Positions 1,491 through 45,221 of a DNA stretch of 64,000 nt are shown here, one piece after another (the stretch's first letter is position 1; every line of letters begins with the position of its first letter). The stretch lies in assembly GCF_044704955.1 (NCBI RefSeq), contig NC_091979.1, positions 318,618,001 through 318,682,000 on the forward strand, in the 5' to 3' direction. The notes beneath the pieces are model-generated. The model saw nothing but the letters and a program-made list of their open reading frames with translations. It made no database searches and was not told the DNA's origin. Made by a program: the position numbers and the translations under genes. The DNA is from Pristiophorus japonicus. Taxonomy: Eukaryota.

Positions 1491-3954
1491 ATTGGTTGGA
1501 AATAGCCAAGTTTAAGGCTATCTCTGGTCCCTTTAATAATCAGGATCAACGGTAAAACCAATCTGGTGGATACATTATATTTAATCAGAGTTTAAGACAG
1601 AATATAACATATTAGTTATAGAGCAAAAACATACAACCGTAACAGGTAGTTGATACCGATTCCGATCGGACAAAAGGCTGATACAAGTGAGCAGTACTCT
1701 GGCTTGCTTGCAGTCTCTTTCTCTCGTCTAGATCTTCCTTCGGTAAAGCATGGGATCTCTCTCGAAAAGTGTTCAATCAGCTAAATTTCTGTTTCGCCCT
1801 TCCCTCACACCATCTATACCATCATTCTTCAGGAAGCTACTTTTATTCTATTTTTAGGAGTGGGCCTGACCCTGGATATTGACAAGACCGTTTGACCTTT
1901 CGAGGTGCCCCTAAAAACTTACTATCCAATAAGCTTTCTAGTTCTTTGTCTCAATTCTTGTTTCAACAACCCGCCTTAAAGATGTCTTACAATTTTGGTC
2001 ACATTTCACTATTTATATCTTATCGAAGTAGCTTTTCTGTGGAATTCCTTTGATACCTCTCTGTCTCTATTCTCCCAGGAACAATCACTACACAGCCTTA
2101 TCCCTCTACTCTTTGAACTATGAAGCTGATGTGGAGTATTACAAAGATGCTCAACACAAGTCTGTTTAGGAGAAAAGATTTGTTTATTAAGTACTCGATC
2201 GAGAGAAAGACAGCTTCTGCACGAGTTCAGTAACTCGGTGATCCAAACTAGCTGTTCTCCTCGAACAAGCGTCAGGTTACTATTTTTATAGTAACAGTCA
2301 AAATACATACAAAATTATGAAGTTCCGTGTGGAAGCTTTCCATTTGTTGTTTCCCTGCCGCATCACAAAGTTTCGCCTAACTTTATGATTGCAAATATTA
2401 ATTAGTTAATACAATTATATTGACAGCAAGCTTCGTTACCTCCCCTGTGCACCTTTTATCTGATAAGTTACGTGCTACATCATTCTCAGGTCTGCGCCTC
2501 TTGGCTGATCTGCTCTCAACCAGTTGAGATTTTTCTCAATCCGCCTTTGTTTCCCGTAATCGTTTATCACCTCATGTGACCTAACCTTGGTCCAACTGTC
2601 TGGGTTATACTGTGATAAGGTGATTTATCTTCCTGAGAGTTGGAGTTTTAACATTTTCCCTGTGTTTCGGAGCACGTATTTCTTTTGTTTCTGACAGCCT
2701 TTATTTTTGGTTGTTAACGTTACTTAATTAGGTCCCCTTTGATTAATTAGGTTCCCTCTACTTCATTTTTTTTCTACAGAAGCAAAACCAAAAAACTGCT
2801 CACCCCAGAGTGTTACGTCTTTTACGACATAGCAACATGTTTACCGTAATTCTACAAACTTCCTTTCATTATCTACACCAGCAGTTTTGTTCAGGTAACT
2901 TTAAACCCTACCCGTTGCATTATACATAAAATACATCAACAAGTATTTAAATTGCCTAGCATCAGGGAGATTGTAAATAGTACAAAAAACTATATCCTCC
3001 ATTTCTAAGCATTTCTCTGATTCGAATCGATATTCCATCTGCAGTTCAAAACAACGATTTAAACATAATATTCTTATCCGTTTTACACATTCGTGACAGT
3101 TTTATACATTTTTAGGAATCCCTGATTTCGAAAAAGTGCTGACAATCAGATGTCCCTCACAACCAACAGTAATACAATAACTCATTGATAGTCTTTATGT
3201 TACAAGCAGTAATAGGTGTAATGTCTCTCTATCCTATGTGTAACTAGCAGTAATACTTTAACCCACTGATACTCACCCTGAAACCATACCCAGAATCCCC
3301 CTGCACTGCACCAGGTGAGGTCAGGCTCCCCAGTTGAAGCCACATTTAAGAGGCCCGATCTCTCTCTCTATCACCTTGGAATCTGATTTGGTCTCCGGTT
3401 CCGTGTGAAGGTGACAATTCTGAACTGGGAACCTCAGTCTGAGCTGATCTGTATTTGGACTTCACACGTCAAACCCGGCCGGCACAGACCCACCTGAACC
3501 AATCCAAGAGATTGCACAAAGGCCAGTGAGCTCAGTGTGTGGGGCACTTCTCACAGGGCACATTGTCCTAAACTCAGCTCAGCACCAACATTTCTAAACC
3601 GTTCCATGTGTTCGGTCTCAATAAAGGAGGGTTTTCATAGAATTATAGAAATGACTGCACAGGAGGAGACCATTCGACCTCGGAGCTTGCACTCTCTTCT
3701 GTAATCCCATTCCCCCCAGATCTTATAACATTCTTCCTTTTCAAATATTTATCACATTCCCTTTAGGTTTTAGAATCCTTGGTTTCTGTTCCCTAGTTCC
3801 CCATTCGCCCACCACTGGAAATAATCTTTCACTATTTACCCACAGTAAGGTCCCCAGGTTTCACTCACCCCTTTACTGGCTGCTCCTCTCTCAGTGTCAC
3901 TCCCACTCACCACGTTACTGCTGCTCCCGGCTCTATGGGAAATACTGGACCCTG

Positions 3955-4870
3955 CACCCACCCCATTCCCCAGTCTCCCTCTCCCCGAACCCCCATTCCC
4001 CAGTCTCCCTCTCCCCGAGCCCCCATTCCCCAGTCTCTCTCTCCCCGAGCCCCCATTCCCCAGTCTCTCTCTCCCAGAGCCCCCATTCCCCAGTCTCCCT
4101 CTCTCCCCAAGCCCCCATTCCCCAGTCTCTCTCCCCCCGAGGCCCCATTCCCCAGTCTCTCTCTCCCCGAGGCCCCATTCCCCAGTCTCCCTCTCCCAGA
4201 GCCCCCATTCCCCAGTCTCCCTCTCTCCCCGAGCCCCCATTCCCCAGTCTCTCTCTCCACGAGGCCCCATTCCCAAGTCTCCCTCTCCCCAAGCCCTCAT
4301 TCCCCAGTCTCCCACTCGCCGAGCCCCCATTCCCCAGTCTCTCTCTCCCCGAGGCCCCATTCCCAAGTCTCCCTCTCCCCAAGCCCTCATTCCCCAGTCT
4401 CTCTCTCCCCGAGCCCCCATTCCCAAGTCTCCCAGTCCCCAAGCCCCCATTCCCCAGTCTCCCGCTCCCTGAGCCCCCATTCCCCAGTCACCCTCTCCCT
4501 GAACCCCCATTCCCCAGTCTCCCACTCTCCACAAGCCCCCATTCCCCAGTCTCCCTCGCCCGGAGCCCCCATTCCCAGTCTCCCTCTTCCCAAGCCCCCA
4601 TTCCCCAGTCTCTCCCTCTCTCCCCGAGCCCCCATTCCCCAGTCTCCCTCTCCCCCACCCCCCATTCCCCAGTCTCCCTCTCCACGAGCCCCCATTCCCC
4701 AGTCTCCCTCTCCCTGAGCCACCATTCCCCAGTCTCTCTCTCCCCAAGCCCCCATTCCCCAGTCTCCCTCACCCAGAGCCCCCATTCCCAGTCTCCCTCT
4801 CCCCAAGACCCCATTCCCAGTCTCCCTCTCTCCCCCAGCCCCCATTCCCAGTCTCCCTCTCCCCCGGCCA
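3955..4870. repeat. C/T-rich ~30-bp minisatellite (ccccattccccagtctccctctccccgagc), ~30 copies; the minus strand is G-quadruplex-type
   Basis: Tandem periodicity of 29-32 bp is directly visible. It generates the spurious GRGRLGNGGS / PIPQSPSP ORFs. Confidence 0.95.
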
Positions 4871-4874
4871 CCAT

Positions 4875-4936
4875 ACATAGAATCATAGAATGGTTACAGC
4901 ACGGAAGACGACCATTTGGCCATCCAGCCCGTGCCG
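4875..4936 (-). mobile_element. CR1-type LINE/SINE 3' tail fragment
   Basis: catagaatcatagaatggttacagcacggaag..ccatttggcc is the reverse complement of a CR1-family 3' end. Confidence 0.6.
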
Positions 4937-5187
4937 AATTAGACACATCTCATTTACATTAAACACCAAAAGACCCAACTGGAGATTTCTATCCAATCAC
5001 CAAAAAGAAAATATCCCCAAACCCACTCAATGATAGATACATTACCGATTACTATTAACACTGGCAGCAGCCAGTGACAATCAAACGAAATGAAGATGCA
5101 GAATCGTGGATTGCTTCTGAATGAACCCTCCTTGCGACACAGCAAGTCCAGATTCTAGTCCCAGTGAACTTCACTTCGGGACCAGCC

Positions 5188-6255
5188 TCAGGCTTGGGCT
5201 GGTGAGTTTGGGGATAATTCTCCTCGTTCAGCAGGGTTCGCTGGGCTGTAACCAGATGTCTCCTCTCCTCCTCTCCTCTTCCACACAACCGCACCGATCA
5301 CAAGAGCAATCAGGGCGACGGCAGCAATCACAATTCCAACAATCAAACCCCTATTTGTTCCCTCTGGCGATCCTGGAGTCACTCGGAACGTCCCGTCCCA
5401 GTCTCGGGTCTTCCCTCCTGCTTGGCCGCTCTGCTCATACTGACAGGAATAGGTGGCTCCATCCGCGGGCTCGATCTGAGCCCATGTCGTGAGCTGGTAG
5501 GTGCCATCGTGGTTGGGCAGGATGCCCGTGGATTCCGTGTCCCTGATTGGCTCGCCATTTCTCAGGAGGGTCACTTGGATTTCGCGAGGGTAAAAACCTG
5601 TGAGGAGACAGGAGAGTTGGGGGGCTTTAATATTCGACGCCTTGTCCACAGAAGGAAACACTTGAGGAGCAACAGCTCCCAGTTCTCTCTCTCCAGCCTT
5701 CAGGTATTTCTTCAGCCACTCGATGCACTCCTGCTCCAGGTAACTTTTGTCCTGCTGCATTTCGGCCCTGTCCTGGTCCCACTTGTTCTTGGTGATCTCT
5801 CCCCACGGTACCGGGGTGACCCACACCAGGCGATCCTTGTCGAAGCTGATCAGGTCCTTCCCGTCCCAGCCGTACTGCCAGAAGCCGCTGGTGGTGCCGT
5901 CATCCCGCAGCTCACAGCCGCACAACCTCTGCAGCGTGTGGATCCCGCCGGTCTGGTTGGTGCGGGTTAAGACGGTCTGAATGTTGCCTTTCATCACCTG
6001 CTCCTTGCCCCGCAGGATCTGTGTGTAGCGCTCCCAGTACTCGGCGCCCTCGCTCTCCCTGATCCACCGCTGCCGCGGGGTGTACTGCCGGCTCACACTG
6101 TCATAGTAAATAAACTGCTGGTCATCCACATAACCCACATCGGTGAACTCAGCAATGCCCGGGAGCGGAGTGATAGCCGTGTGCATGTACCGTAGGGAGT
6201 GAGAGCCTGCACACACCTCTCCACACAGAAGGGCCAGCACGGTCAGTCCAAACAT
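5188..6255 (-). CDS. MHC class I heavy (alpha) chain, intronless, 355 aa (shark-type; possibly the UBA-like lineage)
   Basis: ATG at 6255 in good Kozak context (ACAATG). One uninterrupted frame encodes the signal peptide MFGLTVLALLCGEVCA, alpha1 (GSHSLRY..GYVDD..EYWER..RTNQT, 6207-5947), alpha2 (..GCEL..YGWDGKDLISFD..TKNKWD..YLEQECIEWLKKY, 5946-5674), the alpha3 C1-set domain (LSCLLTGFYP..PNHDGTYQ..YSC), the TM segment LIVGIVIAAVALIALVIGAVVW and a Tyr-containing tail. Confidence 0.96.
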   Translation of the reverse strand: MFGLTVLALLCGEVCAGSHSLRYMHTAITPLPGIAEFTDVGYVDDQQFIYYDSVSRQYTPRQRWIRESEGAEYWERYTQILRGKEQVMKGNIQTVLTRTNQTGGIHTLQRLCGCELRDDGTTSGFWQYGWDGKDLISFDKDRLVWVTPVPWGEITKNKWDQDRAEMQQDKSYLEQECIEWLKKYLKAGERELGAVAPQVFPSVDKASNIKAPQLSCLLTGFYPREIQVTLLRNGEPIRDTESTGILPNHDGTYQLTTWAQIEPADGATYSCQYEQSGQAGGKTRDWDGTFRVTPGSPEGTNRGLIVGIVIAAVALIALVIGAVVWKRRGGEETSGYSPANPAERGELSPNSPAQA

Positions 6256-6349
6256 TGTTACTTCCCTCGACAGGCTGGAATGAGCGGTTTGCAGGCAATC
6301 CTTTTCCGAGAGACCGTCCGTGAGCTGCGCCCAATTCAGACCGTGTGAT

Positions 6350-7306
6350 TCCTGTGCCCTGTGCCGATACTGTGTCTCTGGGACTGTCTCTCTGTGCCCA
6401 GTGCTGATACTGTGTCCCTGGGACTGTCTCTCTGTGCCCAGTGCTGATACTGTGTCTCTGGGACTGTCTCTCTGTGCCCAGTGCTGATACTGTGTCTCTG
6501 GGACTGTCTCTCTGTGCCCTGTGCCGATACTGTGTCTCTGGGACTGTCTCTCTGTGCCCAGTGCTGATACTGTGTCTCTGGGACTGTCTCTGTGCCCTGT
6601 GCTGATACTGTGTCTCTGGGACTGTCTCTCTGTGCCCTGTGCTGATACTGTGTCTCTGGGACTGTCTCTCTGTGCCCTGTGCTGATACTGTGTCCCTGGG
6701 ACTGTCTCTCTGTGCCCTGTGCTGATACTGTGTCTCTGGGACTGTCTCTCTGTGCCCAGTGCTGATACTGTGTCCCTGGGACTGTCTCTCTGTGCCCTGT
6801 GCTGATACTGTGTCTCTGGGACTGTCTCTCTGTGCCCTGTGCTGATACTGTGTCTCTGGGACTGTCTCTCTGTGCCCTGTGCCGATACTGTGTCTCTGGG
6901 ACTGTCTCTCTGTGCCCAGTGCTGATACTGTGTCTCTGGGACTGTCTCTGTGCCCTGTGCTGATACTGTGTCTCTGGGACTGTCTCTCTGTGCCCTGTGC
7001 TGATACTGTGTCTCTGGGACTGTCTCTCTGTGCCCTGTGCCGATACTGTGTCTCTGGGACTGTCTCTCTGTGCCCAGTGCTGATACTGTGTCTCTGGGAC
7101 TGTCTCTGTGCCCTGTGCTGATACTGTGTCTCTGGGACTGTCTCTGTGCCCTGTGCTGATACTGTGTCTCTGGGACTGTCTCTCTGTGCCCTGTGCTGAT
7201 ACTGTGTCTCTGGGACTGTCTCTCGGTGCCCTGTGCTGATACTGTGTCTCTGGGACTGTCTCGGTGCCCTGTGCTGATACTGTGTCTCTGGGACTGTCTC
7301 TCTGTG
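6350..7306. repeat. 40-bp (38-bp variant) minisatellite, ~24 copies, in the presumed 5' UTR of the class I gene
   Basis: Unit gtgctgatactgtgtctctgggactgtctctctgtgccct. The minus strand has no ATG and no stop codon, which explains the artefactual 772-aa ORF. Confidence 0.95.
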
Positions 7307-7340
7307 CTATCTGTTCTTGCGCTTTGCCCAGTGCAGAGTG

Positions 7341-7371
7341 TTTTACACTCAGACTCCTCCGGACTGATTGG
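7341..7371 (-). promoter_or_regulatory. CCAAT box plus TATA-like element (core promoter of the class I gene)
   Basis: The minus strand reads CCAATCAGTCCGGAGGAGTCTGAG-TGTAAAA. The layout resembles the CCAATCAGT...TCTAAA arrangement of mammalian class I promoters. Confidence 0.55.
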
Positions 7372-7494
7372 TTCGAGGGTATATTTGTCTCCAATTACAA
7401 TAAAAACAGGCTGTGAGCCAATAGGCTCCGGGTAGAAAAGACACGGGGAGAGTTTGTGTTGGTGCCGAAATAAACTTTCCAAACATTGAACTAT

Positions 7495-7536
7495 CCAATC
7501 AGACAAATACTGCGAGCTGCATCATCAGTTGCCGGG
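7495..7536 (-). promoter_or_regulatory. MHC X1/X2 box and Y box module (RFX/CREB/NF-Y platform)
   Basis: The minus strand reads CCCGGCAACTGATG, a 20-bp spacer (ATGCAGCTCGCAGTATTTGT), then CTGATTGG. HLA-DRA has CCTAGCAACAGATG, 20 bp, CTGATTGG. The module is oriented toward the class I ORF. Confidence 0.75.
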
Positions 7537-7654
7537 TAGGTTAAAGATAATCCCCGCCTCTCCCGGTCCCGAGTTCTCCCACCACCCTCCAAACCCAACT
7601 TCCCGACTCCCAACCCCCCGAAAGCTCTGCCCACCCCCGGCAGCTCGATCTCCT

Positions 7655-7790
7655 GAGGGGTTCAAGGGATCTGCTGCGAGGGGACTGAAGGGATCTGCTG
7701 GGAGGGGGCTGAAGGGATCGGCTGGGAGGGGGCTGAAGGGATCTGCAGGGAGGGGACTGAAAGAATCTGCTGGGAGGGGGCTGAAGGGAG
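7655..7790. repeat. 24-bp tandem repeat (gaagggatctgctgggagggggct), ~5 copies
   Basis: Directly visible; translates as the LKGSAGRG repeat. Confidence 0.85.
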
Positions 7791-7946
7791 TTGCTGTGGT
7801 GTGTGAGAGAAGGCCAGGGCTGGAGAGGCCCAGTGACCTTGTCTGGAGCCCAGGGATCAGTCCAGCTCTTCCAGGCCCCCACAGAATAAATTACACTCAA
7901 CCTGGCCTCTTCTACCTCCCGCCTGGCCTCACCATGATCCCCCCTG

Positions 7947-8491
7947 ACCCATTCCCCAGTCTCTCTCTCCCGAGCCCCCATTCCCCCTCTCCCCGAGCCC
8001 CCATTCCCCAGTCTCCATCTCCCCGAGGCCCCATTCCCCAGTCTTCCTCTCCCCGAGCCCCCATTCCCCAATCTCTTTCTCCCTGAGCCCCCATTCCCCA
8101 GTCTCCCTCTCCCCGAGCTCCCATTCCCCAGTCTCCCTCTCCCTGAGCCCCCATTCCCCAGTTTCCCTCTCCCCAAGCCTCCATTCCCCAGTCTCCCTCT
8201 CCCCGAGCCCCCATTCCCCAGTTTCCCTCTCCCCAAGCCCCCATTTCCCAGTCTCCCTCTCCCCGAGCCCCCATTCCCCAGTCTCCCTCTCCCCGAGCTC
8301 CCATTCCCCAGTCTCCCTCTCCCCAAGCCTCCATTCCCCATTCTCACTCTCCCCAAGCCCCCATTCCCCAGTCTCCCTCTCCCCGAGCCCCCATTCCCCA
8401 GTCTCCCTCTCCCCGAGCCCCCATTCCCCAGTCTCCCTCTCCCCGAGCCCCCATTCCCCAGTCTCCCATTCCCCGAGCCCTCTTTCCCCAG
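7947..8491. repeat. Second array of the same ~30-bp C/T-rich minisatellite, ~18 copies
   Basis: Same unit and orientation as 3955-4870. Confidence 0.95.
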
Positions 8492-8492
8492 T

Positions 8493-8857: not shown

Positions 8858-9138
8858 ATCATACTAATGGATGATCGTGGATTTCTGCTGGCACTCATGA
8901 GCCAATTGTTCATTTGTTGTTGCCTCCGGGACCATTACGGGATTCCAATGGGTTTCCCCCGAACTGAGGGATGCCAGGCAGTGAGGCTGCAGGGAGGTGT
9001 TCCGGGCCCATGTGCACTGACCTGCTCATCTGTTCTGCTATTCTGACTTTACCAGCATTGCTATGTTGATTATATATGAGCTAAAAATGTAAGTTAGATA
9101 CACATGAGATGGGCTTTGATTATTTTGTTCTCTTACAG

Positions 9139-10160
9139 CAACACACTGAATGATTGCTTGAAAGCAAAACTCGGCCAGCTTCAATGTCACTTCACGTGGG
9201 GCCCACAGAGAGACAGCATTGACTTGGACGACATGAAGTATAGATTACAAGATTTAATACAGGCTCGTGTGAAATATCAGGCCAGGTCTGACAACCACCT
9301 CGCATTTGTAAACTGTCAGCAAGGCAATTCAAAGGGGCAATTCAAAACTTAAAGGAAGCTGAAAAGATTCTGAGGGAGAACCATGAACATGAATTTGAAA
9401 GAAGAAGCATCATCACCTATGGAAACTATGCCTGGGTATATTATCACATGGGCCAACTGACAGAGGCCCAGTCCTACCTCGACAAGCTGGAGATGATCTG
9501 TAAATAATTTACTGATGGCTCTCAGTATACAGCACTGATACCTGAAGTATACGGGGAGAAGGGTTGGTCACTGTTGAATTCTCCTTGTCAATACTATGAA
9601 GAGGCAAAGGAATGTTTTGAGAAGACTCTGGAGGAAGATCCTGATGACACTGAATGGAACGTTGGCTATGCGACTGTTTTGTTCCGTCTGGAAGGGTTTT
9701 CTGGTACCCCAGAGAGTGGTGACCGCAGCCAATCAGTGAAGCAGTTGTGACGTGTGCTGGAACTTGATCCAGATGACTCTGTAGCCATGTTGGCTCTAAA
9801 ACTACAAGAGTTCAATCAAAAGGTGGAAGAACACGAATTAGTTGAACAAGCATTGCAGAAGTCCCCTGATCTTCCATATGTAACTCGTTCTGCAGCAAAA
9901 TTTTACAGAAGAGAAGGAAATGTGGAAAAAGCTGTGGAGCTGTTGAAGAAAGCATTAAAAATTACTCCAAACTCTACCTTCATACACCACCAAATAGGTC
10001 AGTGTTGCAGAAAAAAAATATTTCAACTGATCAAATATCCAGGCAGCAAAGCCCCTCGCAATCCTGCTTTTCAACAGAAAGCTGAGTTGATCAATCAATG
10101 CAAGTACTATTTTGAAAAGGCATTTGAGCAGAAGCCATCATTTATTTTTGCACAATTGCA
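9139..10160 (+). pseudogene. IFIT: IFIT (interferon-induced protein with tetratricopeptide repeats) pseudogene, exon 2, 5' part
   Basis: A splice acceptor (ttctcttacag at 9128-9138) precedes (S)NTLNDCLKAKLGQLQCHFTW..YGNYAWVYYHMG..EVYGEKGWSLL..YEEAKECFEK..LELDPDD..AAKFYRREG..HHQIGQC. There is a frameshift near 9330 and in-frame stops near 9503 and at 9748. Confidence 0.92.
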
Positions 10161-12772
10161 AATCTACAACGCAGAAGGAGGCCATTTCGGCCCATCGTGT
10201 CCACACCGGCCGACAAAGAAACATACGGCCCTCAGTCAGCAGCCCTGAAAGTTACATATAAACGTATGAACAATGAACAATGGCAGAAAGGTAAAGAGCA
10301 CCCAGCCCAACCAGTCTGCCCCACACAACTGCGACACCCCTTGCACCGAAACATTCTACACTCCTCCCCAACCGGAGCCATGTGATCTCCTGGGAAAGGC
10401 AAAAAACAGATAAAAACCCAGGTCAATTGGGGAAAAAATATCTCGGAACATTCCTCTCCAACCCATCCAGGTAATCGAAACTCGTCCAGGAGATCACCCT
10501 GGATATATTCGATTCGCTGCAGTACTTACCATCATAGCTGTGCCTGCCAACAACAGGTTATCCAGTCTAATCCCACTTACCAGCTTTAGGTCCATGTAAC
10601 CCTGCAGATTATGGCACTTTAAGTGTCCATCCAAGCACCTTTTAAATGTGTTGAGGGTTTCTACATCCACCACCCTTCCAGGCCCTAAGTTCCAGACCCC
10701 CACAACCCTCTGCTTGAAAAAGCCACCCCTCAAATCCCCTCTGAACCTTCCACCAACCACCTTAAAACTATGCCCCCTCATAATTGAACCCACCACCAAG
10801 GGAAATAGGTCCTTGCTATCCACTATATCCAGACCCCTCAAAATTTTGGACACCTCAATGAGGTCTCCTCTCAACATCCTCTGTTCCAATGAGAACAAAC
10901 CCAGCCTATCCAATGATGTGGTATATTTGGACTTTCAGAAGGCTTTCGACAAGGTCCCACACAAGAGATTAATGTGCAAAGTTAAAGCACATGGGATTGG
11001 GGGTAGTGTGCTGACGTGGATTGAGAACTGGTTGTCAGACAGGAAGCAAAGAGTAGGAGTAAATGGGTACTTTTCAGAATGGCAGGCAGTGACTAGTGGG
11101 GTACCACAAGGTTCTGTGCTGGGGCCCCAGCTGTTTACATTGTACATTAATGATTTAGATGAGGGGATTAAATGTAGTATCTCCAAATTTGCGGATGACA
11201 CTAAGTTGGGTGGCAGTGTGAGCTGCGAGGAGGATGCTATGAGGCTGCAGAGTGACTTGGATAGGTTAGGTGAGTGGGCAAATGAATGGCAGATGAAGTA
11301 TAATGTGGATAAATGTGAGGTTATCCACTTTGGTGGTAAAAACAGAGAGACAGACTATTATCTGAATGGTGACAGATTAGTAAAAGGGAAGGTGCAACGA
11401 GACCTGGGTGTCATGGTACATCAGTCATTGAAGGTTGGCATGCAGGTACAGCAGGCGGTTAAGAAAGCAAATGGCATGTTGGCCTTCATAGCGAGGGGAT
11501 TTGAGTACAGGGGCTGGGAGGTGTTGCTACAGTTGTACAGGGCCTTGGTGAGGCCACACCTGGAGTATTGTGTACAGTTTTGGTCTCCTAACTTGAGGAA
11601 GGACATTCTTGCTATTGAGAGAGTGCAGCGAAGATTCACCAGACTGATTCCCGGGATGGTGGGACTGACCTATCAAGAAAGACTGGATCAACTGGGCTTG
11701 TATTCACTGGAGTTCAGAAGAATGAGAGGGGACCTCATAGAAACGTTTAAAATTCTGACGGGTTTAGACAGGTTAGATGCAGGAAGAATGTTCCCAATGT
11801 TGGGGAAGTCACAGTCTAAGGATAAGGGGTAAGCCATTTAGGACCGAGATGAGGAGAAACTTCTTCACCCAGAGAGTGGTGAACCTGTGGAATTCTCTAC
11901 CACAGAAAGTAGTTGAGGCCAAATCACTAAATATATTCAAAAGGGAGTTAGATGAAGTCCTTACTACTCGGGGGATCAAGGGGTATGGCGAGAAAGCAGG
12001 AAGGGGGTACTGAAGTTTCATGTTCAGCCATGAACTGATTGAATGATGGTGCAGGCGAGAAGGGCTGAATGGCCTGATCCTGCATCTATTTTCTATGTTT
12101 CTATGTTTCTATCCTCATAGCTAAGTTTCTCCATTCCAGGCAGCATCCTAGCAAATGTCCTCTGCACCCTCTCTATTGCAATCACGTCCTTTCTATAATA
12201 TGGCGACCAGAACTGCACGCAGTACTCCAGCTGTGGCCTAACCAAAGTATTATACATTTTAAGCATAACCTCCCTGCTCTTGTATTATGTGCCTCAGCCA
12301 AGAAAGGCAACCATTCCGTATGCCTTCTTCACCACCTTATCCACCTGGCCTGCTACTTTCAGGGATCTGTGGACAAGCACTCCAAGATCCCTTTATTCAT
12401 CTACACTTTTACCGGTTAATGTGTATACCCTTTCCTTATTAGCCCTCTCAAAGTGCATTACCTCATACTTATCCAAATTAAATTCCATTTGCCACTGCTC
12501 TGCCCACCTGACCATTAGATTGATATCCTCCTGCAGTCCATGACTTTCTGCTTCATTAACGACCACACAGCCAATTTTGGTGTCACCTGCAAACTTCTTA
12601 ATCATACTCCCGATAATCAAATCTAGATCATTGATGTATACCACAAAAAGCAAGGAACCCAGTACTGAGCCCTGCGGACCCCACTGGAAACATCCTTCCA
12701 GTCACAAAAACATCCATTTACCATTACCCTTTGCTTCTTACCGCTGAACCAATTTTGGATCCAACTAGCATG
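10161..12772 (-). mobile_element. CR1 LINE (5'-truncated), split by a nested CR1 at 10915-12112
   Basis: Minus-strand ORF2 pieces LGLFSLEQRMLRGDLIEV (10494-10913) and YINDLD..KFAGDTK..WQMEFN (12393-12653). The sequence is continuous across the nested insert (ccagcctatccaat / cctcatagc). Confidence 0.88.
10915..12112 (+). mobile_element. Young CR1 LINE 3' portion (RT C-terminal half)
   Basis: DVVYLDFQKAFDKVPH..GVPQGSVLGP..KFADDTKL is open almost to the end, followed by a (ttctatgt)n tail. Confidence 0.95.
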
Positions 12773-16276: not shown

Positions 16277-17643
16277 CAGGTACAACGTCTGAAATCCGCT
16301 GTTGGCGCTCCTCGCCATCGGCCAATCCTCCGCTCCTCACCGCCGGCCAATCCTCCACTCCTCGCCATCGGCCAATCCTCCGCTCCTCGCCATCGGCCAA
16401 TCCTCCGCTCCTCACCGCCGGCCAATCCTCCGCTCCTCGCCATCGGCCGATCCTCCGCTCCTCACCGCCGGCCAATCCCCCGCTCCTCACCGCCGGCCAA
16501 TCCTCCGCTCCTCACCACCGGCCAATCCTCCGCTTCTCACCGCCGGCCAATCCTCCGCTCCTCACCGCCGGCCAATCCTCCGCTCCTCACCGCCGGCCAA
16601 TCCCCCGCTCCTCACCGCCGGCCGATCCTCCGCTCCTCACCACCGGCCGATCCTCCGCTCCTCACCGCCGGCCAATCCCCCGCTCCTCACCGCCGGCCAA
16701 TCCTCCGCTCCTCACCGCCGGCCAATCCCCCGCTCCTCACCGCCGGCCAATCCTCCGCTCCTCACCACCGGCCAATCCTCCGCTCCTCACCACCGGCCAA
16801 TCCTCCGCTCCTCACCGCCGGCCGATCCTCCGCTCCTCACCGCCAGCCGATCCTCCGCTCCTCACCACCGGCCAATCCTCCGCTCCTCACCGCCGGCCGA
16901 TCCTCCACTCCTCACCGCCGGCCAATCCTCCGCTCCTCACCACCGGCCAATCCCCCGCTCCTCACCACCGGCCAATCCTCCGCTCCTCACCGCCGGCCAA
17001 TCCTCCGCTCCTCACCACCGGCCAATCCCCCGCTCCTCACCACCGGCCAATCCTCCGCTCCTCACCACCGGCCAATCCTCCGCTCCTCACCGCCGGCCAA
17101 TCCCCCGCTCCTCACCACCGGCCAATCCTCCGCTCCTCACCGCCGGCCAATCCTCCGCTCCTCACCACCGGCCGATCCTCCGCTCCTCACCACCGGCCAA
17201 TCCTCCGCTCCTCACCGCCGGCCAATCCCCCGCTCCTCACCGCCGGCCAATCCTCCGCTCCTCACCGCCGGCCGATCCTTCTCTCCTCGCCACCGGCCGA
17301 TCCTCCGCTCCTCACCGCCGGCCGATCCTCCGCTCCTCACCGCCGGCCAATCCTCCGCTCCTCACCGCCGGCCGATCCTTCTCTCCTCGCCACCGGCCGA
17401 TCCTCCGCTCCTCACCGCCGGCCGATCCTCCGCTCCTCACCGCCGGCCAATCCTCCGCTCCTCACCGCCGGCCGATCCTTCACTCCTCGCCACCGGCCGA
17501 TCCCCCGCTCCTCGCTGGCCGCCGATTCTCACTGGCCGTGGCCCCCCGGCACTGCCCTCCGTTGCCACCTTGGCCGCTTCAAAACTGTCCAATTTTCGGA
17601 CAATTCTGGTTTTGGGAATTCTGGATTCTGGACGTTGTACCTG
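16277..17643. mobile_element. Non-autonomous Tc1/mariner (pogo/Tigger-like) element carrying a minisatellite
   Basis: TIRs caggtacaacgtctgaaatcc (16277) and ggattctggacgttgtacctg (ends 17643). TA precedes the left end; the right flank reads GA. Confidence 0.7.
16305..17522. repeat. 25-bp GC-rich minisatellite (ccggccaatcctccgctcctcaccg), ~48 copies
   Basis: Direct periodicity; the ORF 16302-17651 has a 25-aa period equal to three units. Confidence 0.95.
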
Positions 17644-33216: not shown

Positions 33217-33510
33217 ATAGTGTCAGTGAGTGACACGGTGCCCAGGACAGCGACCCATGTCACAAGTAGTGTCAGTGAGTGACACGATGCCCAGGACAGC
33301 GACCCATGTCACAAGTAGTGTCAGTGAGTGACACGATGCCCAGGACAGCGACCCATGTCACAAGTAGTGTCAGTGAGTGACACGGTGCCCAGGACAGTGA
33401 CCCATGTCACAAGTAGTGTCAGTGAGTGACATGGTGCCCAGGACAGTGACCCATGTCACAAGTAGTGTCAGTGAGTGACACGGTGCCCAGGACAGCGACC
33501 CATGTCACAA
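33217..33510. repeat. 49-bp tandem repeat, 6 copies, inside the Myb exon
   Basis: Unit gtagtgtcagtgagtgacacggtgcccaggacagcgacccatgtcacaa. Confidence 0.92.
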
Positions 33511-34005
33511 GAAGGACATGACTCGGTTCTGAGGGTGAGTATATTTTACATTAACCTGACCATGCCACGCTCTGAGCTCAATGTGCAGTCTCTCCTCAAT
33601 GTGAATGTGTCTGACCCCATGCTCTATGTGGGTGAGACCAGATACAAGGTTCCCATTTGCAGCCTCACCCACTCCAAGGCCTGTATGCACAATTAACCTT
33701 CCTACTCCCTTGTGGACACCCACCCCTCATCCTGTTACCTCCTCAGTCTTCAGATGTATCTGGAAGATGCTAACCTCACAGTAACTGTTAGGTCCTGGCT
33801 CCCCTTCATTCAAGCATTGCCACAAGTACTCGGAGCTAATGGAAGTTATATCAAACTTTAGAGAGTCTCAGACACGAACATGTTCTGAACTATGTAAGGC
33901 ACTTCAGACAGACAGAGAGAAGGGCACTAATTATGACGTTCTTTTTAATCTTGCAGGCCAAATTTGCACAGATTGGAAGAGACCAGATGCGGAATGGAGG
34001 AGGGG

Positions 34006-40997: not shown

Positions 40998-43900
40998 CAG
41001 GGACGGATTAAGAGTGCCTTGGGGCCCGGCTAGTATCCTGATCATGGGCCCCCTACTCCCATTCACATCCTGCAGTAAATGACATTAGTGAGCTAAGTCA
41101 CAGGACACTACACTGAGTATGTATCCGGTCAAGGTCAGGTCAGGTCTACGCCTCAGGTTATGTTCTCATTGCTACTATAACGACTCCCATTTAATATTTT
41201 ATGTTTCCAAATAATCAAACCGATACCTTGATGAAACCCTGTATAAACAGTAAACAACAACGCTTTAATTTTTACAAATCCTTACATTTTGAAACTAAAT
41301 CGACAATGACAACAATTTCGAATAAGACTGTGCAATTTTATTGGAAGACCATCATTTGTCATTTGTATTCTATTTTCTCCACAGAGGCAACTACCATTAC
41401 ATTGGTCTTTTCCTAGATTTTTGTCGGCTAAACTCGTCAATGATTTTTGAGAAGTCAAGTCCTCGCAGTACTTCGCTCTTAATTCTCACGATTGAAAGAC
41501 TATTAAGTCAATCTTGTCCCATTCGGTTCCAGACCTCATCCTTGATGCGTTTTAGTTTCGAGAAGGATTGGTCACCACTGCAATTTGATACCATCCTCGA
41601 CAGGTATATCCGAAGAGCTATTTCAGTGTTAGAAAAGGTTTGGGTGAGGGCGTGTCTATTGAGCAATTGGTACATTCTCAGCTCTGATGGCTTAGTTTGT
41701 TTGACACAACTTGAGGGTTGAAGCTCTGTTGAGGATGCCACCAAGCTAGAAAACTGGATGAATTAATTTTCAATCCTAGGTTCCAGATTGTTGGGATAGG
41801 AACAGGCAAGATTTGCTGTGGTTTGCTTGATCTCATGAGTCGAGAGAGCGGCTAGCTTGGACAGGAATCCAAACTTACAGTTGATTTCCTTGTGTGCTTC
41901 AAGGTGATGTTTCAAGGTATTGATTAGTTGATCAATGATGACAAGGAACACTTCAGTTTTGAATTTCTCCTTGGGTGACAGCACAATGTTTTCAGCGTCT
42001 CCATCGTCATAGTGGCGACTGCATACCTGAACGTGCCTCGGAGCTGAATTGTACTCATTCTGGCCACAGTTTAATCCCTCGGGCTTCGAAGTCCTCAAAC
42101 TCTGTTCACCGTGTCTTGACAAAATCGACAAGGGACCCGAGTAAGGACATCATGACATTTAGATTCAAGCCGATCTCTTGAAGCGAGAGATTGGTCAGGT
42201 GAAAGCGCTTCAAGACTGTGTTCCAAATAACAATGAGAATCGCTGAATCCAGGTCGCCCAGTTTGTCAAGGATCAACTGAGCTTCATTTCAGCATTCAAC
42301 TTTCTGTTTCACCTCAGTTGCCAGGGATTCCAACACTTCACATATGGGAGTGTAATCTTTGAGCAGGGCTGACACTGCTTCATACCTCGCTGACCATCGA
42401 GTAGCAGAAAGCTGTTTGACGACAGACAGCCCTAAAGGCTTTCATTTTTCATAAAGCAGTCGCCAGCGATACGTTGATGCAGAGAGAAAAGTGTACAACT
42501 TTTGTACAATGTCAAAAATCTGATGATCACTGGGCTGCGTTCGGCATTGTTTTTCCCCACAAGGTTGAGTGAGTGTGCTGTGCATGGTATAAACGTCGCA
42601 TATGGGCATTGCTCTTTGATGATAATTTGGACACCAATGTATTTACCACTCGTATTTGAAGCATTATCATAAGATTGTCTGTGGCAATTTTGTACATCAA
42701 TCCCATTCTCATCCAGAAAGGCCAGTGTTATTTCTATTATTTCTATTATTTCTTGTCCAGTATGACCGATTATCGGCAACAACATGAGGAATCTTTCCTC
42801 AGGATCAGTCGGTAGAACATAGCGGACAACAAATGTCAGCTGATCTGAGTGTGTGGCATCTGGTGTTGAATCAACAGATACTGAATAGAACTTCACTGAT
42901 TTCAATTCCTGGATAATTGTCTCAAGTACTTTGCCACCCATCAGACTAATCAGTTCTTCACAAGTGGTGGAAGACAAGTATGAAGTATGCCCCTTGCCTT
43001 TGTTGGCAAACTGCTTGATGTGTTCAGCAAGAAATGCATCGTCGTTTGCGAGATCCTCCAACACACCCAGATAATTACCATTTCTTGGAGACCCAACGAT
43101 TTTGTCTCCACCTCGCAATGAAAGACCTCGTTCACAGAGAAATGTTATGACACAGACAGCCCGTTCTAGCACCTTGCGACAGCACTGCAATTCATTTTCA
43201 AACTTGAAGACAATATGACCATCCACAAAACCAGTGCCTGCTTGTCCAGTGCACATTACTACCATGGCTTCTCTGTGCTGGTGGCTGTTTTCGTGAGATG
43301 AAATCGTCTCATCTCCATGCATCTAGTCATTAAACCCATGAGTAAAGTAGCTTCTTATTCGTGCTGTGACCTTGCAAACAAAGCAGTATACACTACCATT
43401 TGAAGGTAACTAACAGAGCCACATTCACTCCACACGTTCCCCTGTCAGTTGGTGCACACGTGTGAAGAAGGACTTCGAGCAGTATCAGTGACATCCTTCC
43501 TTGGCATGAATCACACCGGAGTTTTGGAAGTCTTTATCACAGTTTCGGTGGTCCTCACTACCTTTTGCAACCCAATGGCTTTACATGTCTTCTGAGATAT
43601 TGTCTCCCCACAGCCCAATGTCGCTCGTAAGTTGCGCCTCTTTCAGCTCAGTATGTGACAGTTGGTTGTCATCTTCTTCAACTTTTTAGACTTGGAGCTC
43701 CAACTCGCCCAACTCCGAGTCTGGTGCCACGAGTGGTTTCATTGTTGAACTTAACTGCACAGCGTCATCTTGGCCTTCATCTTCATGATCTTGAGGTTTT
43801 AGCTGGAAAAAATGTTCTAGTTTAAGCAGTTTAGCTACTTCTCGTCTCTTTTGCTCCTTGCGTAGCTCGTGTTCTTTCCTTTTTTTAACCCGGATTTGTG

Positions 43901-45221
43901 TGTAGAATGCATCTCTAGAAAAAGGGCATCTAGAGGCTGTTTACATCAAGTCGACAATAACATGCGCCTGAGCCCTCGTGGCTTCACTCCACTCCTGCTA
44001 CGTCACTTACCTCAATACTGTTTACCCTTACCCTTAATCCCACCCTGTATGGGCCCCACTCTCGGCTTGGGCCCCACTCTCGGCTTGGGCCCCACTCTCG
44101 GCTTGGGCCCCACTCTCGGCTTGGGCCCCACTCTCGGCTTGGGCCCCACTCTAGGCTTGGGCCCCACTCTAGGCTTGGGCCCCACTCTCGGCTTGGGCCC
44201 CACTCTCGGCTTGGGCCCCACTCTAGGCTTGGGCCCCACTCTAGGCTTGGGCCCCACTCTCGGCTTGGGCCCCACTCTCGGCTTGGGCCCCACTCTAGGC
44301 TTGGGCCCCACTCTAGGCTTGGGCCCCACTCTAGGCTTGGGCCCCACTCTCGGCTTGGGCCCCACTCTAGGCTTGGGCCCCACTCTAGGCTTGGGCCCCA
44401 CTCTAGGCTTGGGCCCCACTCTAGGCTTGGGCCCCACTCTCGGCTTGGGCACCACTCTAGGCTTGGGCCCCACTCTCGGCTTGGGCCCCACTCTAGGCTT
44501 GGGCACCACTCTCGGCTTGGGCACCACTCTAGGCTTGGGCCCCACTCTTGGCTTGGGCACCACTCTAGGCTTGGGCCCCACTCTCGGCTTGGGCCCCACT
44601 CTCGGCTTGGGCCCCACTCTCGGCCCACTCTCGGCTTGGGCACCACTCTAGGCTTGGGCCCCACTCTAGGCTTGGGCCCCACTCTAGGCTTGGGCACCCC
44701 TCTAGGCTTGGGCACCACTCTAGGCTTGGGCACCACTCTAGGCTTGGGCCCCACTCTAGGCTTGGGCACCACTCTCGGCTTGGGCCCCACTCTCGGCTTG
44801 GGCCCCACTCTAGGCTTGGGCCCCACTCTAGGCTTGGGCCCCACTCTAGGCTTGAGCCCCACTCTAGGCTTGGGCCCCACTCTAGGCTTGGGCCCCACTC
44901 TAGGCTTGGGCCCCACTCTAGGCTTGAGCCCCACTCTAGGCTTGAGCCCCACTCTAGGCTTGGGCCCCACTCTAGGCTTGGGCCCCACTCTAGGCTTGGG
45001 CCCCACTCTAGGCTTGGGCCCCACTCTAGGCTTGGGCCCCACTCTAGGCTTGAGCCCCACTCTAGGCTTGGCCCCACTCTAGGCTTGGGCCCCACTCTAG
45101 GCTTGGGCCCCACTCTAGGCTTGGGCCCCACTCTAGGCTTGAGCCCCACTCTAGGCTTGGCCCCACTCTAGGCTTGAGCCCTAGGCGACTGCCCCATTTG
45201 CCTCCCCTTCATTTGTCTCTG
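40998..45221 (-). mobile_element. hAT transposon (ZMYM1-like/Tip100-type transposase), full length but decayed
   Basis: Imperfect TIRs cagggacggatt and catttgtctctg; 8-bp TSD actgcagc / accacagc. Transposase pieces at ~41410-43910: RNGNYLG..YLSSTTCEELI..FYSVSVDSTPD..QSYDNASN..PCTAHSLNL..SNCSGDQSFSKLKRIK. Confidence 0.9.
44050..45185. repeat. 18-bp minisatellite (cactctaggcttgggccc), ~62 copies, in the hAT subterminal region
   Basis: Direct periodicity; produces the LGLGPT / VGPKPR pseudo-ORFs. Confidence 0.95.

What the first reader, a model, noticed from the sequence alone, without database searches (positions are those of the whole stretch)
5188..6255. Completely intronless, intact MHC class I heavy-chain gene
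Seen: leader, alpha1, alpha2, alpha3, TM and cytoplasmic tail lie in a single 1068-bp frame with no stop, frameshift or intron, in a window where almost every other ORF has decayed. Known: class I genes normally have roughly one exon per domain (7-8 exons). Inference: this is a functional retrogene lineage under purifying selection, not a dead processed copy; no poly(A) remnant or TSD is visible and it has a promoter. Caveat: I recall reduced-intron non-classical class I genes (UBA-type) in elasmobranchs, so the lineage itself may already be described.
Basis: partly seen in the sequence, partly recalled or inferred. Interest (0 to 1): 0.8.

Follow-up and report, generated by a model that had tools for sequence, protein, structure and literature searches.

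The report
Single-exon sawshark MHC class I retrogene
A Japanese sawshark gene encodes a complete antigen-presenting (MHC class I) protein on one uninterrupted coding exon; it looks like an RNA-derived copy made by a CR1 jumping-gene enzyme beside a dead interferon-response gene, is one of several near-identical copies, and has not been shown to work.

Summary
On the minus strand, 6255 to 5188 is one frame of 355 codons plus a stop. It encodes leader, alpha1, alpha2, alpha3, transmembrane segment and tail of an MHC class I heavy chain.

The genome is Pristiophorus japonicus. The protein is one of six distinct, 99%-identical annotated proteins. This scan found the same 1068-bp gene earlier in at least seven other windows of this genome.

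The gene is classical (UAA) type, not UBA. All eight peptide-end anchors, the glycosylation site and four cysteines are kept. Its nearest relatives are a second sawshark gene (74%) and Squalus UAA.

- **Origin:** a retrocopy is likely. The unit ends in a CR1 hairpin plus (ATTCTATG)x2 that abuts a 30-bp satellite, which it splits. There is no poly(A), no poly(A) signal and no significant target-site duplication.
- **"Completely intronless":** true only of the coding part. The N-termini of the annotated sister proteins need 5' leader exons spliced in, and these exons are present here.
- **Expression:** near-exact contigs exist in RNA-like runs, without strand.
- **Selection:** not shown for this copy.

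The parts
5188..6255 (-). Coding sequence of the class I heavy chain, 355 codons plus stop. By my alignment-based division: leader 6255-6208, alpha1 6207-5941, alpha2 5940-5668, alpha3 5667-5392, connecting peptide/TM/cytoplasmic tail 5391-5191, stop 5190-5188.
6256..6324 (-). 5' untranslated part of the coding exon. Two AG acceptors lie here: 6326-6325 (exon from 6324) and 6276-6275 (exon from 6274). An exact contig of run X2 ends at 6325.
   Evidence: N-termini of P0001 and P0125
4892..5187 (-). 3' untranslated region, covered by a near-exact contig of run X1 (4880-5438, 2 other letters). It holds no AATAAA or ATTAAA.
4876..4935 (-). CR1-type 3' module: hairpin 4935-4898, then ATTCTATG twice (4891-4876). 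It directly abuts the flanking satellite.
   Evidence: consensus ATTCTRTG and hairpin in PMC8665684 (passages)
3961..4864 (+). 30-bp minisatellite array on the 3' side of the gene
7948..8492 (+). Second array of the same 30-bp minisatellite in the same orientation, on the 5' side. The unit 4865-7947 lies between the two arrays.
6352..7307 (.). 40-bp minisatellite (24 copies) between the upstream motif region and the ATG. It would be intronic in the sister gene models.
7493..7535 (-). X1/X2/Y-box-like motif cluster (AACTGATG, TGATGCAG, CTGATTGG). Function not tested.
8865..8935 (-). Leader exon whose translation equals the N-terminus of sister protein P0125. The donor GT is at 8864-8863.
9053..9058 (-). 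ATGCTG followed by GTAAAG. This is the end of a second leader exon that would give the 'ML' start of sister proteins P0001 and P0122.
9139..10250 (+). IFIT pseudogene, large exon, head-to-head with the class I gene. It has one frameshift and two in-frame stops, and is cut off near 10250 before LINE sequence.

Best explanation
This is one copy of a young multi-copy family of MHC class I genes with a single coding exon in the Japanese sawshark. The protein is of the classical (UAA) type.

Shown:
- The frame is intact and the domain set is complete.
- All eight peptide-end anchor residues, the N-glycosylation site and the four disulfide cysteines are kept.
- The model has a class I fold.
- Six 99%-identical annotated proteins exist.
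- The unit ends in a CR1-type hairpin and octamer tail at its junction with a satellite, which it splits.
- A broken IFIT gene lies head-to-head with it.
- Contigs in two RNA-like runs match the exon almost exactly.

Inferred:
- Origin: a spliced transcript of a UAA-type gene carried a CR1 3' module in its 3' UTR. A CR1 reverse transcriptase copied it into a G-rich 30-bp satellite next to an IFIT gene. The copy took about 1.7 kb of upstream sequence with it, including an X/Y-box-like region.
- Spread: the class I-satellite-IFIT unit was then multiplied by segmental duplication. Some copies have since broken (earlier scan notes, not checked here).
- Transcription: it probably starts at leader exons next to the IFIT exon and splices into acceptors just upstream of the ATG.
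- Function: the product would pair with beta2-microglobulin and bind peptides by their ends. With almost no variation between copies, it would behave as a class Ib-like, low-expressed presenter.

I put the retro origin at about 0.8, a working family at about 0.55 and a working product from this copy at about 0.45.
For: - Protein and fold.
- Family: (six distinct proteins, 1-3 residue differences). Scan notes report at least seven intact 1068-bp copies over about 2.65 Mb and two broken ones.
- Octamer tails: the octamer pair occurs 7 times against 0.15 expected. Five of the seven matches, at three sites (12090; 53843 and 53851; 60465 and 60473), carry the TTTCTATG form. Two of those sites lie downstream of RT ORFs of this window. 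The class I site is the only exact match.
- Tail structure: five aligned tails share a hairpin of 13 pairs. Three pairs show compensatory changes, all in the class I row. The single-sequence fold has z -2.6. PMC8665684 (passages) states that CR1 needs a hairpin plus the ATTCTRTG microsatellite.
- Satellite split: 35 of 35 matches to the 30-bp unit lie in the two flanking arrays and nowhere else in 64 kb.
- Lineage constraint: the six copies form a 100/100 clade with a stem of 0.24, next to P0005 (93/78) and Squalus UAA. The window protein has 5 changes at sites invariant in 12 other rows, mostly conservative, against 1-2 in most rows and 7 in one.
- Transcripts: X1 contigs cover 4880-5438, 5425-5739 and 5731-6016 with 2, 0 and 1 other letters. 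An X2 contig covers 6134-6325 with 0. Unique flanks (7670-7824, 8910-9064) have no depth in X1, so the run is not whole-genome DNA. Contig ends fall at the acceptor (6325) and at the CR1 tail.
Against: - No canonical poly(A) signal lies on the gene strand from 5187 down to 3300.
- No significant target-site duplication: a match of 9 is reached by 153 of 5000 random pairs and 565 of 5000 shuffles.
- Intactness of a 99%-alike copy is expected by chance (2292 of 4000 at 1%).
- No dN/dS could be computed.
- The runs are not on record as RNA and the contigs carry no strand.
- One contig joins an antisense donor inside the gene (5739) to the IFIT exon (9139). Part of the cover could therefore be antisense.
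- With six or more near-identical copies, the contigs cannot be assigned to this one.
- Exact contigs are laid at word depths of about 36-50, against tens of thousands for the P0005-like paralogue. The tool warns that depth ranks poorly.
- The leader exons carry in-frame ATGs ahead of the signal peptide.
- The insert includes promoter-like upstream sequence, which is unusual for a retrocopy.
- The exon structure of P0005 and of other squalomorph genes could not be seen.
- The IFIT partner here is dead.
Confidence: 0.6

Rival explanations
1. It is a young processed pseudogene family that is transcribed but useless. The retrocopy was recently multiplied together with its IFIT neighbour. Every copy is still about 99% like the source, so the frames are open by chance. 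Transcription is by-catch from neighbouring promoters or from antisense IFIT transcripts.
For: At 1% random change the frame stays open in 2292 of 4000 trials. There is no poly(A) signal. The apparent depth is low, and an antisense joint runs to the IFIT exon. The IFIT partner is a pseudogene. Scan notes report two broken copies (not checked). The setting is rich in satellites and LINEs.
Against: The six copies share a long stem (0.24) on which the frame, all anchors, the cysteines and the glycosylation site survived, with only 5 mostly conservative changes at otherwise invariant sites. Contig ends coincide with the sense exon's acceptor and tail. Splice sites for the leader exons are intact here.
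Confidence: 0.27
2. It is not an RNA-mediated copy at this site. On this reading, a class I gene that had already lost its coding introns, by recombination with a cDNA or in an older ancestor, was moved and multiplied as DNA with its own upstream region. The CR1 module is an unrelated, 5'-truncated CR1 insertion that happens to sit at the edge.
For: The unit carries about 1.7 kb of upstream sequence with an X/Y-box-like motif. There is no poly(A) and no significant target-site duplication. The gene structures of P0005 and other members of the clade are unknown to me.
Against: The CR1 hairpin and octamers are in the gene's orientation and form the exact 3' boundary against the satellite. That is where target-primed reverse transcription would put them. 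Contigs of the highly expressed P0005-like paralogue also lie on the 3' UTR bins at 90% or more in X1. This fits a shared 3' UTR, though repeats may inflate the last bin. All domain-boundary introns are missing at once.
Confidence: 0.1
3. It is an assembly artefact or cDNA contamination.
For: None beyond the general oddity of an intronless class I gene.
Against: The unit has non-cDNA flanks: an upstream region, minisatellites and a CR1 tail. The same gene recurs at many places in the genome. A third run of another labelled organism holds near-identical pieces.
Confidence: 0.01

Closest known systems
Teleost (salmonid) MHC class I L lineage, the 'processed genes' of Dijkstra et al. 2007 as described in PMC4364491 and PMC6797598 (passages seen)
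   Same: These are class I genes that lost the introns between alpha1, alpha2 and alpha3, with a proposed origin by retroposition of a partly spliced mRNA. They are multi-copy and lie away from the classical locus. Some members are interferon- or virus-induced.
   Different: L genes keep the leader on a separate exon and lack the peptide-end anchor residues. Here the leader is in the same exon and all eight anchors are kept. The host is a shark, the tail is a CR1 module and the neighbour is IFIT. I did not place teleost L sequences in a tree; none was among the 120 best hits listed.
Shark classical class I (UAA): nurse shark 6LUP, Squalus acanthias Q8HWH7, sawshark P0005
   Same: Fold, domain order, anchor residues, glycosylation site, cysteines and tail tyrosine are the same. 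The nearest tree neighbours are P0005 and Squalus.
   Different: Identity to P0005 is only 74%. The copies hardly vary. The gene has a single coding exon and does not sit beside antigen-processing genes in this window. The serine-rich end of the tail is changed (SSSNSS in relatives, LSPNSP here).
CR1 retroposition rule and LINE-tailed SINEs (Suh 2015 as cited in PMC8665684; PMC3747384; passages)
   Same: An RNA that ends in the LINE's own hairpin and octamer microsatellite is what a 'stringent' CR1 reverse transcriptase is thought to accept. This unit ends in just that.
   Different: The passenger is a whole protein-coding mRNA, not a tRNA- or 5S-derived SINE body. The papers seen give this requirement as the reason retrogenes are scarce where CR1 dominates.
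L1-type processed pseudogenes of MHC genes, such as the wallaby class II DAB processed pseudogene (PMC3179965, passages)
   Same: An intronless copy of an MHC gene away from its parent.
   Different: That copy has a stop codon, a poly(A) tail and a poly(A) signal. This one has an open frame and neither a poly(A) tail nor a signal.

Membership tests
MHC class I heavy chain | alpha1-alpha2 peptide-binding superdomain followed by an Ig C1-set alpha3 | tested here: met
   Pfam MHC_I 8.4e-53 and C1-set 1.1e-14. 6LUP at E 5.3e-94. The model matches 6lup_A with TM 0.93 by target.
MHC class I heavy chain | Signal peptide, transmembrane helix, cytoplasmic tail, two disulfide pairs | tested here: met
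   A hydrophobic leader precedes GSHSLRY, the first residues of the 6LUP chain. The model has a helix at 302-328. C101, C164, C203 and C259 equivalents are present.
Classical (class Ia, UAA-type) class I | Eight residues that hold the peptide ends (Y7, Y59, R/Y84, T143, K146, W147, Y159, Y171) | tested here: met
   All eight are present in the alignment-based table. The list of residues is from established knowledge, partly seen in PMC8236899.
Classical (class Ia, UAA-type) class I | High polymorphism centred on the groove | tested here: inconclusive
   The six family proteins differ by 1-3 residues, only two of these in alpha1/alpha2. These are paralogues of one animal, not alleles of a population.
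Classical (class Ia, UAA-type) class I | Tight linkage to TAP, PSMB8 and tapasin | tested here: inconclusive
   None was seen in 64 kb; the neighbours are an IFIT pseudogene, LINEs and satellites. Only the 10 largest other ORFs were scanned, so short exons would be missed. The chromosome-scale position was not available.
Classical (class Ia, UAA-type) class I | High, broad expression | tested here: inconclusive
   Near-exact contigs are present in X1 and X2, but at far lower word depth than the P0005-like paralogue. The contigs give no strand, tissue or level.
Processed retrogene of the L1/poly(A) kind | No introns, poly(A) tail, target-site duplication, intron-bearing parent elsewhere | tested here: not met
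   There are no coding introns. There is also no A-run of 5 or more and no significant duplication.
CR1-mobilised retrocopy | The 3' end is the LINE's hairpin plus octamer microsatellite, in the copy's orientation, at the insertion boundary | tested here: met
   Hairpin 4935-4898 plus ATTCTATG x2 at 4891-4876, 11 letters from the satellite. Octamer-pair tails of the TTTCTATG form lie at three sites in this window, two of them downstream of RT ORFs, and the aligned tails share the hairpin.
CR1-mobilised retrocopy | The source mRNA carries the same CR1 module in its 3' UTR | tested here: inconclusive
   High-depth contigs at 90-95% likeness lie on the 3' UTR bins in X1 but not in X2. The last bin may be inflated by repeat transcripts.
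Teleost L lineage | Lacks peptide-end anchors; leader on its own exon; teleost clade | tested here: not met
   The anchors are kept and the leader is in the same exon. All nearest relatives are shark UAA-type genes. No L sequence was placed in the tree.
   The six copies sit with P0005, Squalus and Heptranchias genes. The sequences that lack anchors (for example Heterodontus O19480, sawshark P0066) form another clade. Lineage names of most rows are not given by any source I saw.

The most novel reading that the evidence does not exclude
A classical-type, peptide-binding MHC class I gene escaped the shark MHC. It travelled as an mRNA that ended in a CR1 tail and landed head-to-head with an interferon-induced IFIT gene. 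There it picked up leader exons and regulation, and expanded into a working family. That would be the first elasmobranch class I family outside the MHC. It would also be a rare protein-coding retrogene made by a 'stringent' CR1 reverse transcriptase.
Probability: 0.3. Interest if true: 0.8.

Novelty: new variant of a known kind. Interest (0 to 1): 0.62.

Why it matters
A 2023 survey of white shark, catshark and sawfish states that no elasmobranch MHC-Ia/b gene lies outside the MHC, and builds an ancestral-linkage argument on that (PMC10751288, passages). A class I family among IFIT genes in a squalomorph shark would be an exception, if the IFIT region is indeed off the MHC, which I could not check.

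It would also be a classical-type groove uncoupled from TAP, tapasin and PSMB8. That is a natural test of the co-evolution idea.

[quoted passage not shown] This locus shows what happens when an mRNA carries that tail.

My searches found no paper on intronless or retro-copied shark class I genes and none on the sawshark MHC. I saw listings only for most hits, and supplements were closed.

Tried and rejected
- **Second class I copy in the window:** none. tblastn and blastn of the gene against the 64 kb gave only the self hit.
- **Genomic structure of P0005 and of a sister copy:** So there is no parent exon map and no DNA of other copies, hence no dN/dS. The only codon-level glimpse is four listed differences of the high-depth paralogue at 5674, 5679, 5683 and 5695. 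Three fall on third codon positions and one gives G193R as in P0005. That is too few to count.
- **Target-site duplication:** a flanking repeat (9 letters with a 2-letter gap) is reached by 153 of 5000 random pairs and 565 of 5000 shuffles. Rejected.
- **Poly(A) tail or signal:** none.
- **IFIT first exon or ISRE promoter upstream of 9139:** no ATGAG|GT, and only loose GAAA pairs at 198, 1786 and 8599. I therefore cannot say whether the class I unit lies inside the IFIT intron.
- **kappaB, ISRE, CRE and GAS sites:** none in 7308-7947. In 8936-9400 there is one loose GAS-like match, at 8963.
- **3' UTR as a repeat within the window:** blastn found no other copy. Only the last 60 letters or so align to LINE tails.
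- **'Mosaic alpha3 by gene conversion' (note s1-878651):** the alpha3 is indeed unlike nurse shark or Triakis UAA (41% and 37%). It is shared, however, by P0005, Squalus, Heptranchias and several galeomorph genes (72-84% in the squalomorph rows, 60-69% in the galeomorph rows). It is therefore a clade trait, not a feature of this gene.
- **Monophyly of copies plus P0005:** found, but not starred (93/78). The alternative P0005+Squalus clade is not rejected (AU p 0.245).
- **Rows left out of the trees:** fusion-length hits P0002-P0004, P0031, P0056 and P0083; fragments such as P0039, P0073, P0086, P0099 and P0100; and most non-shark hits.
- **The search of earlier findings by sequence with P0005:** blank, which means nothing.
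- **Spliced models:** I translated the leader exon and the coding exon's 5' part separately and compared them by eye with the sister proteins.
Full report
**The observation**

On the minus strand, an ATG at 6255 opens a frame of 355 codons that ends with a stop at 5190-5188. The product carries Pfam MHC_I (residues 17-192, E 8.4e-53) and C1-set (199-275, E 1.1e-14). It aligns to the nurse shark class I chain 6LUP from its first mature residue, GSHSLRY, to the end of alpha3 at E 5.3e-94.

An AlphaFold model built on a 50-row alignment has pLDDT above 90 over most of the ectodomain, a transmembrane helix at 302-328, and 6lup_A as its best Foldseek match (TM 0.93 by target).

The mechanical ORF extends upstream to 7506 only because a 40-bp minisatellite (6352-7307, 24 copies) is open in that frame. 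The window holds no second class I copy.

**Whose gene, and how many**

The exact protein is in the public collection. Its 90% cluster has six distinct members of 355-385 residues. The five that carry a name are all called 'class I histocompatibility antigen, F10 alpha chain-like', Pristiophorus japonicus, and they differ from one another by 1-3 residues.

The next best hits among 577 (120 listed) are:
- fusion-length models of rays;
- a second sawshark protein, P0005 (74%);
- Squalus acanthias Q8HWH7 (72%);
- Heptranchias perlo (68%).

No other species has anything closer.

This scan met the same 1068-bp gene before. Its notes list intact copies at seven other places, from 2.0 Mb before to 0.65 Mb beyond this window, plus two broken ones, among IFIT genes. 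I did not check those windows. The six proteins are my own evidence that the family exists.

**What kind of class I**

In a quick tree of 81 rows and a careful tree of 31 rows, the six copies form a fully supported clade on a long stem (0.29 and 0.24 changes per column) with almost no depth of its own. In the careful tree the clade's sister is P0005 (93/78, not starred), then Squalus (92/87). The alternative that P0005 and Squalus pair first is not rejected (AU p 0.245).

The wider clade of 18 rows (100/100) also holds Heptranchias and a set of galeomorph genes. It has its own alpha3 type:
- 72-84% identical to the window protein in the squalomorph rows;
- 60-69% in the galeomorph rows compared;
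- 41% to nurse shark UAA and 37% to Triakis UAA.

The window protein keeps all eight residues that hold peptide ends, the N86-equivalent glycosylation site and the four disulfide cysteines. So do P0005, Squalus, 6LUP and Triakis. Sequences such as Heterodontus O19480 or sawshark P0066 lack several of them. This is a classical-type molecule by sequence.

**Retro origin**

The gene's sense strand ends, 297-312 letters past the stop, in ATTCTATG twice (4891-4876), preceded by a hairpin (4935-4898). Eleven letters further on, a 30-bp minisatellite begins.

- **Octamer pattern:** the octamer-pair pattern occurs 7 times in the window against 0.15 expected. Apart from the class I site, which is the only exact match, there is one degraded minus-strand site at 3636 and five matches of the TTTCTATG form at three sites. 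The sites at 12090 and at 60465/60473 lie downstream of RT ORFs of this window; the one at 53843/53851 is not tied to an ORF I scanned.
- **Shared stem-loop:** five aligned tails share a stem-loop of 13 pairs. Three pairs show compensatory changes, all in the class I row.
- **Literature:** PMC8665684 (passages) gives hairpin plus ATTCTRTG microsatellite as the 3' structure CR1 needs. It cites Suh 2015 for the idea that this need explains the scarcity of retrogenes where CR1 dominates.
- **Satellite:** it occurs only as two arrays in one orientation, 3961-4864 and about 7948-8492. All 35 matches to the unit in 64 kb lie in these arrays, so the 3.08-kb unit 4865-7947 looks like an insertion into one array.

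There is no poly(A) run and no AATAAA or ATTAAA on the gene strand down to 3300. A flanking 9-letter repeat is not significant. The lead to look for a CR1 tail came from earlier scan notes; the tests are mine.

**Not fully intronless**

Three of the six sister proteins have N-terminal extensions.
- The extension of P0125 equals the translation of 8935-8867, which runs into a GT at 8864-8863. It continues with the residues encoded just after the AG at 6276-6275.
- The 'ML' start of P0001 and P0122 fits ATGCTG|GTAAAG at 9058-9053 and the AG at 6326-6325, after which the window encodes LTDGLSEKDCLQTAHSSLSREVT.

I compared these pieces exon by exon and made no joined sequence. Gene models of sister copies therefore have a leader exon and an intron of about 2.6-2.7 kb. 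That intron would hold the TE, the satellite, the X/Y-box-like region and the 40-bp minisatellite. The same sites are intact here.

The extensions put an in-frame ATG ahead of the signal peptide. This looks like an annotation choice and would not help the protein.

An X1/X2/Y-box-like cluster lies at 7535-7493, and no ATG occurs on the gene strand between 7486 and 6256. I found no kappaB or ISRE site and cannot say which start is used.

**Neighbour**

Head-to-head with the gene, from 9139 on the plus strand, lies the large exon of an IFIT gene. It matches IFIT5 at 1e-28 and IFIT1 at 1.4e-28. It is broken by a frameshift and two stops and is cut off near 10250. I found no IFIT first exon upstream. 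The rest of the window is LINE pieces, a DUF4371 ORF and minisatellites.

**Transcripts**

Three runs hold parts of the stretch; none is on record as RNA.

Contigs laid on the gene:
- X1: 4880-5438, 5425-5739 and 5731-6016, with 2, 0 and 1 other letters.
- X2: 4992-5169 with 1 other letter and 6134-6325 with 0.
- X3 (another labelled organism): 5209-5357 with 2 and 5646-5948 with 1.
- No listed piece covers 6017-6133, which proves nothing.

Unique flanks such as 7670-7824 and 8910-9064 have no depth in X1. Contigs of a paralogue lie on alpha3 to the 3' UTR at 90-95% likeness with word depths in the tens of thousands. Their loose ends at 5744 and 5349 translate to P0005-like residues. I infer that X1 and X2 are transcriptomes and that the P0005-like gene is the main expressed class I.

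Among the 15 joints shown (4 more not shown), none lies within the coding part on the gene's strand. One contig joins a plus-strand donor at 5739 (CAG|GTAACT, antisense to the gene) to the IFIT acceptor at 9139. Antisense transcripts therefore exist in some copy.

Contigs have no strand. The fit of their ends to the sense exon (6325 and the CR1 tail) favours sense mRNA but does not prove it, and nothing ties them to this copy.

**Selection**

Random substitution leaves the frame open in 2292 of 4000 trials at 1%, 14 of 4000 at 10% and 1 of 4000 at 15%. So the open frame of a copy that is 99% like its sisters is uninformative. The survival of the frame and of every key residue along the long stem is informative.

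The stem shows 5 changes at sites invariant in 12 other classical-type rows (F24M, P35A, M111L, E227Q, S347L). Most rows show 1-2 and one shows 7. This does not look like free drift.

**Comparison and novelty**

- **Closest described case:** the teleost L lineage. It has lost the alpha-domain introns, with a proposed origin from a partly spliced mRNA; it is multi-copy and some members are interferon-induced. It lacks peptide anchors and keeps the leader on its own exon.
- **Processed MHC copies in mammals:** those I saw have poly(A) tails and are dead.
- **Published generalisation:** PMC10751288 states that no elasmobranch class I gene lies outside the MHC, based on three species, none of them squalomorph. 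It has no occurrence of 'intronless', 'retro', 'processed', 'IFIT' or 'Pristiophorus'.
- **Searches:** searches for intronless or retro-copied shark class I genes and for the sawshark returned nothing on the subject.
- **VGP preprint:** its retrocopy screen removes families with more than five paralogues, which might hide this one.

**Verdict**

I file it as a new variant of a known kind: a processed class I gene family, here of classical type, CR1-made and IFIT-linked. For this copy, function is unproven.

Noticed in passing
window 9139-10250 (+): IFIT pseudogene head-to-head with the class I gene. The acceptor AG is at 9137-9138. There is one frameshift near 9330-9350 and stops near 9502 and 9751, and homology to IFIT1/IFIT5 ends near residue 355. 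No first exon was found upstream.
   Followed up: partly
window 5739 -> 9139 (+): One contig of run X1 joins a plus-strand GT donor inside the class I coding sequence (antisense) to the IFIT exon's acceptor. This is a chimeric antisense-class I/IFIT transcript from this or a sister copy.
   Followed up: partly
window 6352-7307 and 7486-6256 (-): The 40-bp minisatellite between the X/Y-box-like region and the ATG has no stop in the gene's frame, which makes a spurious 772-residue ORF. The gene strand has no ATG at all from 7486 to 6256.
   Followed up: partly
window 12090-12105, 53843-53866, 60465-60488 (+); 3636-3651 (-): Resident CR1-like tails end in TTTCTATG repeats after a conserved hairpin. 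The class I unit carries the ATTCTATG variant with compensatory stem changes, so it belongs to another subfamily.
   Followed up: yes
proteins P0005-P0016 against 6LUP and Triakis: A shark-wide class I clade (sawshark, Squalus, Heptranchias, Heterodontus, Scyliorhinus, Stegostoma, Chiloscyllium) has a distinct alpha3, 5-9 residues longer and only about 40% identical to nurse shark and Triakis UAA alpha3. It mostly keeps the peptide anchors. No source I saw gives its lineage name.
   Followed up: partly
run X3, window 5209-5357 and 5646-5948: A run labelled as a different organism (2021) holds pieces 99% or more identical to the gene, and shows more depth on the 30-bp satellite than on the gene. 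It may be low-coverage DNA of the same or a sister species.
   Followed up: no
window 42432-43322 (-): ORF with DUF4371, a transposase-associated domain, among the LINE fragments.
   Followed up: no
window 16306-17513, 33218-33511, 44050-45181, 47633-48371, 49275-50690: Five further minisatellite arrays (units of 25, 49, 18, 20/30 and 61/123 bp). The window is unusually rich in them.
   Followed up: no
   Followed up: no
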